This document shows, piece after piece, positions 12,201-18,200 of a stretch of DNA of 64,000 nt. Numbering within the stretch: position 1 is the stretch's first letter; the number at the start of each line of letters is the position of its first letter. The DNA is taken from positions 19,282,001 through 19,346,000 of the forward strand of contig NW_026889774.1 of NCBI RefSeq assembly GCF_033153115.1. The letters run 5' to 3'. The stretch is from Saccostrea echinata (Eukaryota). Under the pieces are notes generated by a model. It saw nothing but the letters and a program-made list of their open reading frames with translations, did not search any database and was not told the DNA's origin. The position numbers and the translations under genes are program-made.

Positions 12201-15200
12201 AATAAGTTTGCTAATTCTTACGTAGTTTTTCCTGCAGTTCTAGAACAGCTACTTCTAGGTCATGTTCCCTTGTGACCAGTTTCTCCCTTTCTTCTGTTAA
12301 TGAGGTGATCTATTAAATGAAACAAACAATTACAGACTTAAAATATATACTTATAAATATATTTATCTAAGATTATGCCATAATTTATTTTCAAATATCA
12401 ATCACTAAAAAATCTTTTTTTCACTTGAGCATTTGCAAAAGCAATGTTCAATTTTCTAAAATTTTCAAAAAAAACAAAAAAAACAAAAAAAAAAAACATT
12501 AAACAACACTGGATAAAAAGAAAATAGTCAAAGCACAGGTGCTTGTGAACAGAACCATTTTTTTCCTATGATATGAATGATGAATAAGTGTAAAAAACAT
12601 AATTTATGAAAAAAAGTTGAACAACCCTCTGGTTGTATATTCACTATATTGGAGGTGGGTGTCCTTTCTACAAGTACCTGTGAGTCAAAGTTCATAAATC
12701 TTTCCATCTAAGAAAAATGCAATAATCTGACAAAAGAGCTGGGAGATATGGTGTTGTAACTGGTCTATAACTGACTGATAGAGAAGTGACATTACCTGAC
12801 TAGTGAGCTGGGAGTTATGATGTTGTAACTGGTCTATAACTGACTGATAGAGAAGTAATATTACCTGATTAGTGAGCTGGGAGTTATGATGTTGTAACTG
12901 GTCTATAACTGACTGATAGAGAAGTGACATCACCAGACTAGTGAGCTGGGAGTTATGGTGTTGTAACTGGTCTATAACTGACTGATAGAGAAGTGACATC
13001 ACCAGACTAGTGAGCTGGGAGTTATGGTGTTGTAACTGGTGTATAACTGACTGATAGAGAAGTGACATTACCTGACCAGTGAGCTGGGGGTTATGGTGTT
13101 GTAACTGGTCTATAACCAACTGAGAGAGAAGTGACATTACCTGACTAGTAAGCTGGGAGTTATGGTGTTGTAACTGGTGTATAACTGACTGATAAAGTGA
13201 CATTACCTGACTAGTGAGCTGAGAGTTATGGTGTTGTAACTGGTCTATAACTGACTGATAGAGAAGTGACATTACCTGACCAGTGAGCTGGGAGTTATGG
13301 TGTTGTAACTGGTCTATAACTGACTGAGAGAGAAGTGACATTACCTGACTAGTAAGCTGGGAGTTATGGTGTTGTAACTGGTGTATAACTGACTGATAGA
13401 GAAGTGACATCATCAGACTAGTGAGCTGGGAGTTATGGTGTTGTAACTGGTCAATAACTGACTGATAGAGAAGTGATATTACCTGACTAGTGAGCTGGGA
13501 GTTATGGTGTTGTAACTGGTCTATAACTGACTGATAGAGAAGTGATATTACCTGATTAGTGAGCTGAGAGTAACGGTGTTGTATCTGGTTTATAACTGAT
13601 AGATAGAGAAGTGACATTATCTGACTAGTGAGCTGAGAGTTATGGTGTTGTAACTGGTCTATAACTGACTGATAGAAAAGTGACATCACCAGACTAGTGA
13701 GCTGGGAGATATGGTGTTGTAACTGGTCTATAACTGACTGATAGAAAAGTGACATCACCAGACTAGTGAGCTGGGAGTTATGGTGTTGTAACTGGTCTAT
13801 AACTGACTGATAGAGAAGTGACATCACCAGACTAGTGAGCTGGGAGTTATGGTGTTGTAACTGGTCTATAACTGACTGATAGAGAAGTGACATCACCAGA
13901 CTAGTGAGCTGAGAGTTATGGTGTTGTCTGGTCTATATCTGACTGATAGAGAAGTGATGTTATGGTGTTGTAACTGGTCTATAACTGACTGATAGAGAAG
14001 TGACATTACCTGACTAGTGAGCTGAGAGTTATGGTGTTGTAACTGGTCTATAACTGACTGATAATGCCTCTTGCTCTCCTCCTTTTCTGACACTAATCTG
14101 TTGTAGGTCTCCTGAATCTACAACAACAAAATTAATATGTACAATATAATCAATTTCAATCTGTTAAAGGTCATTATTATTCTCTCAATCTACCCAAGAG
14201 TAACAGCAGAGAGTTAAATAATACTTGTTTTATTTCAAACTTATCAGTGACAAAATATGTAAGAAAATGTGCTTCTATTTCAACTTTAATAAACAAATCT
14301 TTGAATGCATGTAAACAAATCAAGATTTGTTTGTGAAACACTATAAGGCTTGTTCCATGTTGTGAAGTCTTGTAAATACTTTACCTTATACTGAAATGAA
14401 TGCACAAAAATTTACTTCATTAGCATACCCTATTTTGAATTCTTCATTTTTCATATTACATGTTAGGACCAGAGTAAAAATCCTTGTCAACTGGAAGAAT
14501 GACAAGTCTCCTGGACTTCAGTATCAAAAAAAGTTACAGAGCTTCTACATCTTTCAGTAGACAAAAACATTTATAAAACACACCTCGGAGAGTTCCGCCC
14601 TGAGAGCCTCTGTTTCACGTCGCTGCTTCTCCATTGCCTGTAATGTCTGCTCCTTGTTATCACCCTGACTGGACGACTGCTGGACATACAGTTCTGCCAT
14701 CTCCACCTTTGACCTTAGGTCTCTGACACTCTCCTCTAGCTGACTACACTCCAATTTCTGAAGTTAATTTTGAGATTTTATTTTAACTTTTTTTCAGAGA
14801 AAAAAAATATTCATGTATATATACATTCACAATGTCATATTGAATGTAAATTAAATCATTTTTTTTAATGTAGAATATTCTACTAGGTATAATACACAAT
14901 GACCATGGTAATACATGTACATGCAAGCCTACAATATTACCTTGCTCTGAAGTTCTCCTCCCAGCTCTTCTACCTGCTGATGTAAATCCTCCTGGGTTTT
15001 ACTACAAAACACAAAAAATAAATTACAAGCAACCCAATAAATTCACATTTCATGTTCTCTTTTTTTATTCATTTTTGGGTTTTGGCAAAAAGTGTAAGTT
15101 TTAATTCTAACATGAACAGAAACTTCAAGTATGTGCACATCCCCCTTCAAGGAGCAAATGATCCTTGAAATCATCAGTGGCATAAATTGGACCTATCAAA

Positions 15201-18200
15201 ATTGTACATTATTCATGAAGAATGAGATTTTAGCAACTTTTTTTTAAATAAATATATTGTTCATGTCTGTGATATGATGTAATAGAATGTTTTTACAATT
15301 TCCCTGTATAATTACAAAGAAGTGGCATCAACAAAACAAAAGAAATTTTATAATACCTCTATTTACCTGTACAACTACTTGTAAACATAACTTTATGTAT
15401 TTTTAACTGTAAAATGCTATACCTTGATAGACGAAGATCCATCTTCAGTCTGTCAACTTCTCTTGCAAACTCTTTACTGCTCTACAACAAAATTACAACA
15501 AACTTACATGTAGATGATAAAATGCTATTTGAATAAACTTGATATGTTTTCAATGGAAACAAGTACAAAACTTGTATTAAACTACACAGAACTTGTTTTA
15601 TGCATTCAGTCCTAGTTCTTTGATTAAGATTCTGCTTTTTCCATCAATGCTGAAAAATGTTATGCTGACATACATGTACCTTCACTTTAAAGATTAAAAA
15701 AAGCTCACTTTTTCAAACTGCTGAGCAGAGTTGTTGGTTGTGGCAAGACTTCTTTCTAGGTCACCAACTCTCTGTCTGGATGTTTTCAACCGAGAACTGA
15801 TGTCCTCAATTTCAGCTAGAAGTAAATCATAATCCATAATACTTCATTACATACATTGTAACATGGCAATCACAAATCTTTTAAAAAATCATACCACGTA
15901 TTCACTTTCTTAATCATATTTTTGAATTGCCAACACAGATTTACGTACATACAGTATAAACTTGGAACTTTTTCCATTCAGACATTTTGCATGTTGACAG
16001 AAAAAGTTGGCACTAAATTTATCATTAAGAAGTGTGACTTACAAAGCCTCTGTGCTGCTATCTTTTGTGACTGGCTCAGCTGTGATTGCAGTTCCGTCTT
16101 CTCAGCCACTAAAATACCAATAGTTTGTATGTGTACCTGAAAAATAATCACCTGTATTATGTAAATGTACAATAATATATGATAAATGACGATGTAAGAA
16201 TTATCTTGCCAAATTCACCTTTAATCCGTCAAAGTCAGCTCTGCAAGAATACATTTTTGAGCGATATCTATATATGCTGTCTAAATGCCATAACAACTTT
16301 TTAAACATAATCTTAAGAACAGGATTTCAACAGCATCCATTTAAGTACAACTCCCTTGAAGCAACCACATGCATCAATCAGTGAACCACTGGCTTTTCAT
16401 GACAATGAACTATACCTAGTAAGCATCAATAATTGTTTTTAACTTTCCCGTTGTATCTAAAATCTCCTGAAATATCAGATATAAATCCAAAAGAATGTAA
16501 AAACCTGATTAAATATTCTTTGTGTAACCAAACAAAAAAAAACCTGAATCGTAAAATAAAATGTGCAGATGGGAAGTGAAGGACTGGTAGTAAATGATGG
16601 AGGATATACACTACCTGAACATCTGACTGAATTGCCTAAAAAAAGATAATTCATGCAGTAACACTTACAACAAAACATTTAAATATTCCTAAATTAGATC
16701 ATATTCTCCATAATCCAATCTAAATTCCCTACTCGTTGCAATCATGCCCTTATTTCTGATTTAGTGTAAGAATAAATAGTGCACCTTTAGACTTCCTTAT
16801 TGCTTTGCCCTGGGAGAAATTTGGACATACCTGTAGTTGTTCTCTAAGTGGCCCAATTTCTTTTTTCTGTTTTTCTGTGGAGCTCTCCATTTCTTGGTCC
16901 AGCTGAGATTGCAATGACTGTGCATGTTCTCTCTACAATAAAGCAGGATTCAATCATGCATTAAATATCAGCTACATTGTATACAGCAAAAAGCATTCAC
17001 AGATTTAAACTAGGCAACTTTCAGCCGACAAATTACACCCTCAATNNNNNNNNNNNNNNNNNNNNNNNNNNNNNNNNNNNNNNNNNNNNNNNNNNNNNNN
17101 NNNNNNNNNNNNNNNNNNNNNNNNNNNNNNNNNNNNNNNNNNNNNNNNNNNNNNNNNNNNNNNNNNNNNNNNNNNNNNNNNNNNNNNNNNNNNNTCAACA
17201 AAAAAAATTTCTTTTTAAGCCCCCGTTCACACATAGACGCCGCTTCTACTACGATCAAAGCGTGGCCGATCATGACAAATCGCAGGAGAAACGTAGCGCA
17301 GTATGATCGCGGTAGGGTCTTCATGATTGGAGAGCTCTACGGTCTCGCCACGCTTATTTTGAACATGCTCAAAACAAGTCTAGCGGGATCGTGGCCAACA
17401 AGAATTGGGGTAAAGTTGTAAAAAGAGCGTAGTAGAAGCGCCGTAATCGTACAAGCAGCGCGGAAGCATCGTGGAGAGATCTCTGTGATCTTTGTGATCG
17501 TAGTAAAAGCGCAGTACAGTCGGGAACTTATCAAGTACCCTCCTACAACGCTCCCACTATGTTCTTACTACATTCCCACCATCAAGTAAATCATACTAGA
17601 AGCGTAACACAATCGTCATATGATCGGCACCACCGTAGCGATATCGTTGTACAGTCATCTAGGTCTGAATGTCGTAGTGGCAACGTAGCGTAAACGCAGT
17701 AAACGCGGCCGCTGGTCGGCAACGGTCTGCGTAACAGCGTAGCAGAAGCGTGTTAGCAATGCGGTTGACGAAGGGGCCTTGTAGTACGGTCGTAATGAAG
17801 ACCATAATTTGCCAAATCGCTCGATTTAGATGCCGATCGGCTCCGATCCGCCCCGATCCAAAACTTTTTCAGATCCTGGCTTGATCGGGATGATCGTTGT
17901 AAAGTCGCAGCTCTGTGTGAACGGGGGATTAATATTGATTTTTTCACACAGTTGAAACTTTTAAGTTAGCTCTTGTATTTCTATGACAAATAAAATGCAA
18001 GTTCATTGATAAAGGTTTCTGAGGTATACAAATATTAAATCGTACAAACTAAATAGAACAGTTTAATTAGATACTGACTGCCTGATGGACCTGTTTTTGT
18101 AGCTTATGGTTTTCTTCTATTTGTTTCTGCAGTTGACTTGCCAATTCTTTGTTCCTTGTCTGAAAGAAGAGAATCCTTTTTTAAACATATAGTAAATATA

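What the first reader, a model, noticed from the sequence alone, without database searches (positions are those of the whole stretch)
12727..14063. Exon/intron-junction minisatellite that builds an array of potential in-frame cassette exons in GM130
Seen: the 69-bp unit parses as a 48-nt phase-0 exon (SVIDQLQHHNSQLTSQ) plus a 21-nt spacer GTAATGTCACTTCTCTATCAG. The spacer starts with the true donor and ends in a pyrimidine-CAG acceptor, with a CTCAC branch-like motif about 30 nt upstream. Adjacent 21-nt spacers are too short to splice, but joining non-adjacent units gives introns of 90, 159 nt and so on. Donor strength varies by unit (CAG|GTAATG, CTG|GTGATG, dead CAG|ATAATG). Inference: a possible combinatorial system for changing golgin coiled-coil length, and a snapshot of intron/exon birth by tandem duplication.
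Basis: partly seen in the sequence, partly recalled or inferred. Interest (0 to 1): 0.78.

Follow-up and report, generated by a model that had tools for sequence, protein, structure and literature searches.

The report
Splice-junction minisatellite in oyster GM130 intron
An intron of an oyster's GM130 (golgin) gene begins with about twenty tandem copies of the preceding exon's end plus its splice signal; this kind of repeat is already described, and the transcripts seen cut the whole array out as ordinary intron.

Summary
The array is real. It has 20 units of 69 bp on the minus strand, 14063 to about 12706. Unit 1 is the last 48 nt of a transcribed GM130 exon plus the first 21 nt of its intron. 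It occurs nowhere else in this 923-Mb genome. The 16-residue peptide is single-copy in all 5 Ostrea edulis GM130 isoforms, so the exon came first and the array was copied from it.

Sixteen of 20 units keep a GT donor. Thirteen are complete in-frame 48-nt pseudo-exons. Assembled RNA contigs from 4 runs (3 studies) show only the 14010|12309 junction and no coverage inside the array. The units show no coding or splice-site constraint. A 16-residue insert would also shift the coiled-coil heptad register by 2.

This is a "mirage"-type exon-junction minisatellite, known from amphioxus and from human F7, IFI6, CBS, LMNB2 and PDGF (PMC3087553, PMC1557585). There too, the most upstream donor is used. 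The scan has already noted the same kind of array at several other loci of this genome.

Rare cassette use cannot be excluded from contigs. The array's existence as DNA, and its copy number, rest on the assembly alone.

The parts
14010..14117 (-). GM130 exon (108 nt, 36 aa, phase 0-0). Its last 48 nt are the exon part of repeat unit 1.
   Evidence: RNA contig pieces and joints 14117|14584 and 12309|14010. It aligns to O. edulis golgin A2-like residues 346-381.
14004..14012 (-). Authentic 5' splice site CAG|GTAATG. It is the most upstream of 16 GT donors and the only one seen in use.
   Evidence: Joint 12309|14010 with GT..AG ends on the minus strand in 4 of 4 runs. Donor table.
12310..14009 (-). 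The whole 1700-nt intron, about 80% of it filled by the array.
   Evidence: 'skips 1700' joint; depth is zero in all 14 bins from 12353 to 13990 in 4 of 4 runs.
12706..14063 (-). The minisatellite: 20 units of 69 bp (48 nt of exon end plus a 21-nt spacer). It is led by a 6-nt TATCAG that matches the end of every spacer and it ends in a decayed unit.
   Evidence: TRF, unit table, identity matrix, sequence.
13943..13988 (-). Unit 2, truncated to 46 nt. A 23-nt deletion removed its donor.
13876..13942 (-). Unit 3, 67 nt (2-nt deletion). Its exon part has stops in the unit frame. Together with unit 2 it puts the rest of the array out of frame with the exon.
12685..13896 (-). 403-codon open frame across units 4-20 in the unit's own frame. 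It is a by-product of near-identical stop-free units, not evidence of coding.
   Evidence: ORF list. Only 13 of 207 possible single substitutions make a stop, so 24 variant types leave about 0.21 probability of no stop (one search counts, my arithmetic). No homologue at E <= 0.01.
12222..12309 (-). Next GM130 exon (88 nt), with the acceptor that is actually used.
   Evidence: Joints 12309|14010 and 11493|12222. Aligns to O. edulis residues 382-411.
14584..14757 (-). Upstream GM130 exon (174 nt).
   Evidence: Joint 14117|14584, sequence, tblastn.
11352..11493 (-). Downstream GM130 exon (142 nt).
   Evidence: Joint 11493|12222 in 3 of 4 runs, tblastn.

Best explanation
This is a locus-specific intronic minisatellite of the exon-junction ('mirage') kind. 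A 69-bp segment made of the last 48 nt of a conserved GM130 coiled-coil exon plus the first 21 nt of the following intron was duplicated in tandem. The first duplication probably happened by slippage or unequal exchange between two TATCAG hexamers, one in the exon and one at intron positions +16 to +21. The array then grew to 20 units by further unequal exchange and gene conversion. The spliceosome uses the most upstream donor and the distant acceptor at 12309, so the whole array leaves with the 1700-nt intron. The 15 downstream GT pseudo-donors and 18 pseudo-acceptors stay silent at the level that assembled transcripts can show. The array has no shown function and drifts without coding constraint. 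Shown here: the anatomy, the uniqueness in the genome, the ancestry of the exon peptide, the junction used, and the lack of constraint. Inferred: the microhomology origin, the growth mechanism, and neutrality.
For: Array and unit structure. All 8 matches to a 3-unit probe in the 923-Mb genome lie inside this array. The gene is GM130: exon 10740-10931 hits PF15070 at E 7.9e-19, 68.3 bits against a cutoff of 29.2, and 273 proteins match at E <= 0.001. The best full-length relative is O. edulis golgin A2-like. The peptide occurs once in 5 of 5 O. edulis isoforms and is followed directly by the next exon's residues; homologous single stretches are present in three more distant full-length relatives. 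Only the 14010|12309 joint appears in 4 of 4 runs; it is bridged by at least 31 letters on both sides in 2 of them (X5 88, X6 79) and by 21 and 29 letters in X1 and X3. Depth is zero over the array. Six downstream units carry the identical donor 9-mer, so position rather than strength marks the donor used. This is the behaviour shown experimentally for human F7 (PMC1557585, abstract, introduction and discussion read). There is no constraint: 24 variant types, 5 synonymous to 11 non-synonymous, 0.33 types per site in the exon part against 0.38 in the spacer, and 3 types on the 4 splice dinucleotide sites. Signs of concerted evolution: units 1=13, 11=14 and 4=17 are identical, while the edge unit is only 71-81% like the others. 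The same pattern is described for mirages (PMC3087553, passages).
Against: All the RNA evidence comes from assembled contigs at word depth of about 10-30. Contigs drop rare variants, so minor cassette isoforms cannot be excluded. Alternative-donor products would carry premature stops, so if they are degraded they would be under-represented. No DNA reads were laid: X6, labelled 'DNA?', shows spliced joints and so behaves as RNA. The array's existence and copy number therefore rest on the assembly alone. By crude counts the pseudo-acceptors are as pyrimidine-rich as the real acceptors of this gene (13 of 18 against 9-13 of 18 at the four real acceptors scored), so why they stay silent is not explained. 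Neutrality is inferred from 24 variant types, which is a small sample.
Confidence: 0.8

Rival explanations
1. One reading: the array is a working set of optional 48-nt cassette exons. Splicing between non-adjacent units would add 16-residue modules to the GM130 coiled coil in variable number.
For: Thirteen of the 19 downstream units have an AG acceptor, an open 48-nt body and a GT donor. Six share the true donor's 9-mer, and a CTCAC lies about 30 nt before each acceptor. Stochastic variable-copy splicing of tandem units does exist in human UBC (PMC10809524, abstract and section 7 read).
Against: No joint into or out of the array, and zero depth across it, in 4 of 4 runs. No coding or splice-site constraint. 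The first candidate after the true donor, unit 3, is 46 nt with stops. Sixteen residues is 2 modulo 7, so each insert breaks the heptad phase, which otherwise runs unbroken across the real junction (read from the sequence; inference). All 5 O. edulis isoforms have one copy.
Confidence: 0.06
2. The array is silent in the mature mRNA but acts on the pre-mRNA. Its reiterated donor sequences might bind U1 snRNP and help define the upstream exon or suppress premature cleavage. Alternatively, each CAG|GTAATG might act as a dual-specific or recursive site, so that the intron is removed stepwise and the same 5' splice site is regenerated each time.
For: Sixteen GT donors within 1.3 kb, ten of them as complementary to U1 as the true site (7 of 9 consensus matches). 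Every unit carries an AG|GT junction, and splicing to it would recreate exactly the canonical exon end, which would be invisible in mRNA (sequence). AGGT dual-specific sites are reported to be enriched in tandem-repeat genes (PMC10809524, abstract).
Against: There is no positive evidence. Four donors have decayed, and the GT and AG sites are not spared from variation. The intron is only 1.7 kb, so stepwise removal is not needed. There is no notable RNA structure (z -0.62) and no Rfam family. O. edulis makes the same junction, but whether it has an array is unknown.
Confidence: 0.1
3. The array, or its copy number, is an assembly artefact.
For: No independent DNA reads were examined. Published mirage loci have been mis-assembled in genome drafts (PMC3087553, supplementary-file legend seen).
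Against: The units are not identical copies: there are 24 variant types in a patchy pattern, two deletion-bearing units and a decayed edge unit. An assembler does not invent that pattern. The RNA joint skips exactly 1700 nt between GT and AG, but this does not measure intron length. The assembly is contiguous, with 425 contigs for 923 Mb.
Confidence: 0.04

Closest known systems
'Mirage' minisatellites of amphioxus (Adh3 and the globin genes BflGb6 and BflGb9)
   Same: Both are tandem repeats whose units span an exon-intron boundary and many of whose units keep AG/GT signals. In both, regular splicing is undisturbed. Both show concerted evolution inside the cluster with the boundary unit left out. 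The model that an exonic repeat part may later become a real exon is already proposed there (PMC3087553, passages read; the original Adh3 paper is known to me only through that citation).
   Different: The host is a bivalve, not a cephalochordate. The unit here is mostly exon (48 of 69 nt), in phase 0 and a multiple of 3. Length polymorphism and somatic instability, shown for amphioxus, were not testable here.
Human exon-junction VNTRs: F7 intron 7 (37 bp), IFI6 (6-16) intron 2, CBS intron 13, LMNB2, PDGF intron 4
   Same: In all, the first monomer spans the exon-intron boundary, so the donor is reiterated in the intron. [quoted passage not shown] In F7 the choice goes by upstream position, not by strength (PMC1557585, abstract, introduction and discussion read).
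   Different: The F7 unit holds only 4 nt of exon. Here it holds 48 nt of exon plus a spacer ending in a usable-looking acceptor, so whole pseudo-exons are reiterated, not only pseudo-donors. No mutational test has been done here.
Human UBC polyubiquitin with dual-specific AGGT splice sites
   Same: A tandem array of in-frame units bounded by AG|GT, where splicing between units could change copy number without changing frame (PMC10809524, abstract and section 7).
   Different: In UBC the units are exonic, strongly conserved as protein, and a ladder of isoforms is seen by RT-PCR. Here the units are intronic and unconstrained, and no ladder is seen in contigs.
Intron gain by tandem duplication of an AGGT-containing segment
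   Same: A tandem duplication multiplies splice signals and can create new exon-intron structure.
   Different: In that model a new intron is actually spliced between the duplicated sites. Here a pre-existing intron has simply been lengthened. I know PMC3265369 and PMC4974935 only from the search listing and abstract starts.

Membership tests
Exon-junction ('mirage') minisatellite | Tandem array of minisatellite-sized units | tested here: met
   Period 69, 17.8 copies, 92% matches, score 2045. Twenty units parsed.
Exon-junction ('mirage') minisatellite | The first monomer spans a functional exon-intron boundary | tested here: met
   Unit 1 is 14057-13989. The exon end at 14010 is the donor used in RNA contigs of 4 of 4 runs.
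Exon-junction ('mirage') minisatellite | The splice-site sequence is reiterated in the intron | tested here: met
   Fifteen of 19 downstream units keep a GT donor, and 6 have the identical 9-mer.
Exon-junction ('mirage') minisatellite | Regular splicing is not disturbed; the authentic (most upstream) site is used | tested here: met
   Only the 12309|14010 joint is seen, with zero depth in the array. These are contigs at depth about 10-30, so rare forms are not excluded.
Exon-junction ('mirage') minisatellite | Concerted evolution within the array, with the edge unit left out | tested here: met
   Identical pairs 1=13, 11=14 and 4=17. Unit 20 is 71-81% like the others; its last 30 nt are 57% like unit 19.
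Exon-junction ('mirage') minisatellite | Copy-number polymorphism between alleles or individuals | not testable with these tools
Array of alternative cassette exons (UBC-like variable-copy splicing) | Transcripts that join non-adjacent units or include internal units | tested here: not met
   No such joint in 4 of 4 runs. The limit is that contigs drop rare variants.
Array of alternative cassette exons (UBC-like variable-copy splicing) | Units in frame and bounded by usable splice signals | tested here: met
   Thirteen of 19 downstream units. Units 2, 3, 7, 8, 10 and 20 are defective.
Array of alternative cassette exons (UBC-like variable-copy splicing) | Purifying selection on the encoded module and on its splice sites | tested here: not met
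   5 synonymous to 11 non-synonymous types (28 to 108 possible). Exon part 0.33 and spacer 0.38 types per site. Three types on the 4 splice dinucleotide sites.
GM130 / GOLGA2 (the host gene) | Match to the golgin A2 family profile and co-linear orthology with an annotated GM130 | tested here: met
   PF15070 at E 7.9e-19 on one exon. tblastn of O. edulis isoform X1 maps co-linear exons from 20403 to 6215 at 64-97% identity.

The most novel reading that the evidence does not exclude
The array may not be fully silent. At a low, stochastic level, or in particular tissues or under stress, internal units might be spliced in as 16-residue cassettes. Alternatively, the AG|GT in each unit might serve as a dual-specific or recursive site. 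Because unit 13 is identical to the expressed unit 1, the array may also exchange sequence with the coding exon by gene conversion, acting as a reservoir that feeds variants into a conserved golgin exon. Together with the many other donor-anchored arrays that earlier notes of this scan report in this genome, this would point to an oyster-specific process that amplifies exon ends and supplies raw material for new exons.
Probability: 0.1. Interest if true: 0.55.

Novelty: new member of a known kind. Interest (0 to 1): 0.25.

Why it matters
Taken alone, this locus is an ordinary example of a described curiosity. It is a natural experiment of the F7 type in a mollusc: 16 donors, six of the downstream ones identical to the true site, and only the first is used in the transcripts seen. 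Here whole pseudo-exons are reiterated, not only donors. That makes it a good minigene substrate for asking why strong-looking internal exons are ignored, and whether the rule that the upstream site wins holds outside mammals. Its wider value depends on the claim, made in earlier notes of this scan and not tested here, that such arrays are unusually common at donors in this oyster genome. If that holds, this locus adds a clean case with a visible 6-nt microhomology at the array's start.

Tried and rejected
Dispersed repeat or transposon origin: rejected. A 207-nt probe of three units matched only inside this array in the whole genome, 8 of 8 matches. That DNA search skips very common words, so this is a lower bound.

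The open 403-codon frame as evidence of coding: rejected. The unit has few stop-prone sites (13 of 207 possible substitutions). With 24 variant types, the probability of no stop is about 0.21 (one search counts, my arithmetic).

Pfam hits of that ORF (OrfB_IS605, HALZ, DUF2187 and others): rejected. They are repeat-summing artefacts; most list 0 stretches that pass on their own.

A regular three-unit higher-order repeat, suggested: rejected. Mean identity is flat at 0.92-0.93 for lags 1-7, and only scattered identical pairs exist.

RNA structure masking the pseudo-sites: none found (three units, z -0.62). Rfam: 0 matches at gathering score in 11000-15500.

Relatives' ORF calls covering the exon plus intron start: the search for homologous proteins with the 74-residue read-through found 2 candidates and none at E <= 0.01. 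With the 403-residue ORF, 8000 candidates were scored and none passed. Both searches see only proteins of 0.55-1.75 times the query length, so they say nothing about longer proteins.

Whether relatives carry the array is therefore unknown.

Literature: one search for minisatellite + exon-intron boundary + oyster gave 1 paper, which was irrelevant. From that single search of the held library I found no report of such arrays in oysters. The original amphioxus Adh3 'mirage' paper is not in the searchable library and is cited only through PMC3087553. Supplementary files were not opened.

No formal test was run on the synonymous to non-synonymous ratio.

Full report
WHAT IS THERE

Read on the minus strand, the window holds a 108-nt exon (14117-14010) that ends in CAG|GTAATG. 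From 14063 downward a 69-bp unit repeats head to tail. Tandem Repeats Finder reports period 69, 17.8 copies, 92% matches and score 2045 at 12736-13957, plus a 46-nt variant at 13915-14003.

I parsed 20 units, starting at 14057, 13988, 13942, 13875 and so on to 12774. A full unit is 48 nt in the exon's frame (SVIDQLQHHNSQLTSQ) followed by a 21-nt spacer that begins with the donor and ends in TATCAG. Unit 1 is the real exon end plus the real intron start. The six bases before unit 1 (TATCAG, 14063-14058) are the same as the last six of every spacer. So the repeat really starts there, and two TATCAG hexamers 69 nt apart are a plausible seed for the first duplication. That origin is an inference.

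- Unit 2 is cut to 46 nt and has lost its donor.
- Unit 3 is 67 nt and has stops in the unit frame.
- Unit 13 is 66 nt.
- Unit 20 keeps its first 39 nt (95% like unit 19), but its last 30 nt are only 57% alike.
- Reading straight on from the exon meets a stop at 13895. Use of any later donor with the intervening units retained would therefore give a premature stop.

Of the 20 units, 16 keep a GT donor. Six downstream units (11-15 and 19) have the same 9-mer as the true site. Units 2, 7, 10 and 20 have none. Eighteen of 19 spacers end in AG. Thirteen downstream units (4-6, 9, 11-19) are complete pseudo-exons, with an AG acceptor, an open 48-nt body and a GT donor.

THE GENE AND WHICH CAME FIRST

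The exon at 10740-10931 matches Pfam PF15070 (GOLGA2L5) at E 7.9e-19, 68.3 bits against a cutoff of 29.2. A scan of 1.84 billion representative proteins with that exon gave 273 hits at E <= 0.001. The best full-length hit, P0004, is named by its sources golgin subfamily A member 2-like isoform X2 of Ostrea edulis.

tblastn of isoform X1 against the window lays co-linear exons from 20403 down to 6215 on the minus strand at 64-97% identity. The window therefore comes from an oyster close to O. edulis but not identical to it. This is an inference; earlier scan notes also call the genome an oyster.

All 5 of 5 O. edulis isoforms contain the peptide once, with 15 of 16 residues identical, followed directly by the residues of the next exon. 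Three more distant full-length relatives have one homologous stretch each. The exon end is therefore ancestral and the array is copied from it.

A three-unit probe matched nothing else in the 923-Mb assembly; all 8 matches lie inside the array. It is not a dispersed element.

WHAT THE TRANSCRIPTS SHOW

The one run search gave no run on record as RNA, but several small-share holders. I laid four on 11300-14800: X1 and X5 (one sample, organism A), X3 (organism B, another study) and X6 (organism A, a third study, labelled 'DNA?'). All four are assembled contigs, and all four behave as RNA because they carry spliced joints.

Three joints were reported:
- 11493|12222, in 3 of 4 runs.
- 12309|14010, in 4 of 4 runs.
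- 14117|14584, in 4 of 4 runs.
All have GT..AG ends on the minus strand.

The 12309|14010 joint is bridged by 88 and 79 letters on the shorter side in X5 and X6. In X1 and X3 it is bridged by only 21 and 29 letters, below the tool's 31-letter rule. Every depth bin from 12353 to 13990 is zero in all four runs.

So the array is removed whole with a 1700-nt intron. Two caveats apply. Depth is only about 10-30, and contigs drop rare variants. Minor isoforms, and products carrying premature stops if these are degraded, would be missed.

IS THE ARRAY UNDER SELECTION?

Among units 1 and 4-19 there are 24 variant types.
- In the exon part, 5 are synonymous and 11 non-synonymous, out of 28 and 108 possible.
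- Types per site are 0.33 in the exon part and 0.38 in the spacer.
- The four splice dinucleotide positions carry 3 types, no fewer than elsewhere.
- The 403-codon open frame (12685-13896) is not evidence of coding. Only 13 of 207 possible substitutions create a stop, so about one neutral array in five would stay open (my arithmetic).

Searches with that ORF and with the exon read-through found no relative (both are limited by protein length). Its Pfam hits are repeat artefacts.

Units 1=13, 11=14 and 4=17 are identical, and mean identity is flat with distance. This is the patchy homogenisation expected from unequal exchange and conversion, with the edge unit left behind.

There is no notable RNA structure (z -0.62) and no Rfam family.

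WOULD THE CASSETTES MAKE SENSE IN THE PROTEIN?

In the real protein the hydrophobic a/d positions (I3, L6, N10, L13 of the peptide, then I and L at positions 1 and 4 of the next exon) continue in one heptad phase across the junction. Sixteen residues is 2 modulo 7, so each inserted unit would shift the phase by two. This is arithmetic on the sequence and an inference. It argues against a designed length-changing device, although golgins do tolerate breaks in the coiled coil.

WHAT IS KNOWN

Minisatellites whose first monomer spans an exon-intron boundary are described in human F7, IFI6, CBS, LMNB2 and PDGF. Usually only the authentic donor is used; in IFI6 and CBS the two nearest pseudo-sites are used too. 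For F7, 50 constructs showed that the pseudo-sites are functional but lose to the most upstream site whatever their strength (PMC1557585; abstract, introduction and discussion read).

In amphioxus such repeats are called 'mirages'. They do not disturb splicing, they show concerted evolution with excluded edge units, and a model in which an exonic repeat part becomes a new exon is already drawn (PMC3087553; passages read).

Variable-copy splicing of tandem in-frame units is real in human UBC (PMC10809524; abstract and section 7). There, however, the units are exonic and conserved, and a ladder is seen.

The term 'mirage' reached me through earlier notes of this scan. Those notes report the same kind of array at several other loci of this genome and claim an excess at donors. 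I checked the literature part of that claim but not the genome-wide part.

VERDICT

The locus is a new member of a known kind: a mirage-type exon-junction minisatellite in the GM130 gene of an oyster, spliced out whole. The combinatorial-cassette reading is possible in sequence terms, but nothing I could test supports it.

Three things remain open:
- Rare isoforms.
- Copy-number variation, and presence of the array in relatives.
- Why pseudo-acceptors that look as good as the real ones by a crude pyrimidine count are ignored.

Noticed in passing
window 7424-7493 (minus strand, inside exon about 7347-7553): A 33-bp unit repeated 2.1 times lies inside a coding exon of the same GM130 gene. Relative to O. 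edulis the window has 11 extra in-frame residues there, a tandem duplication of an HYHE.SLTG motif. So the same gene also carries a tandem duplication that is expressed as protein.
   Followed up: partly
window 14312-14344: Very short contigs (31-33 nt) with high word depth (32-155) in X1 and X5, each with 3 mismatches, lie in the intron upstream of the exon. The spot contains a small inverted repeat. Probably a k-mer shared with a repeated element expressed elsewhere.
   Followed up: no
window 14058: An RNA-contig variant C>T on the plus strand sits exactly at the base before unit 1 of the array. It appears in 3 of 4 runs, alongside the reference base in X1 and X6 and as the only base in X3. 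It is synonymous in the exon frame (CAG to CAA). Probably an allele or strain difference.
   Followed up: no
window 11571-11808: One low-depth contig (2.3) on the plus strand with 8 differences lies inside the intron between exons 11493 and 12222, in X1 only. It could be unspliced RNA, a repeat or an antisense transcript.
   Followed up: no
window 16140-16830: O. edulis isoform X1 has 7 residues between the exons that map to 16932-16831 and 16139-16044; these residues are missing from isoform X2 (944 against 937 aa). A small alternative exon may lie in this interval, which overlaps another first-stage note (s1-803380).
   Followed up: no
window 26800-29600 (minus strand): Long coiled-coil ORFs typical of a muscle myosin heavy-chain tail, in a stretch of higher G+C (0.39-0.42 against about 0.33 elsewhere). 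The gene name is my reading of the translations, not a search result.
   Followed up: no
window 8074-8254: A 93-bp unit repeated twice lies in the intron about 50 nt after the GM130 exon that ends near 8300. It does not include the donor, so it is not of the junction-spanning kind.
   Followed up: no
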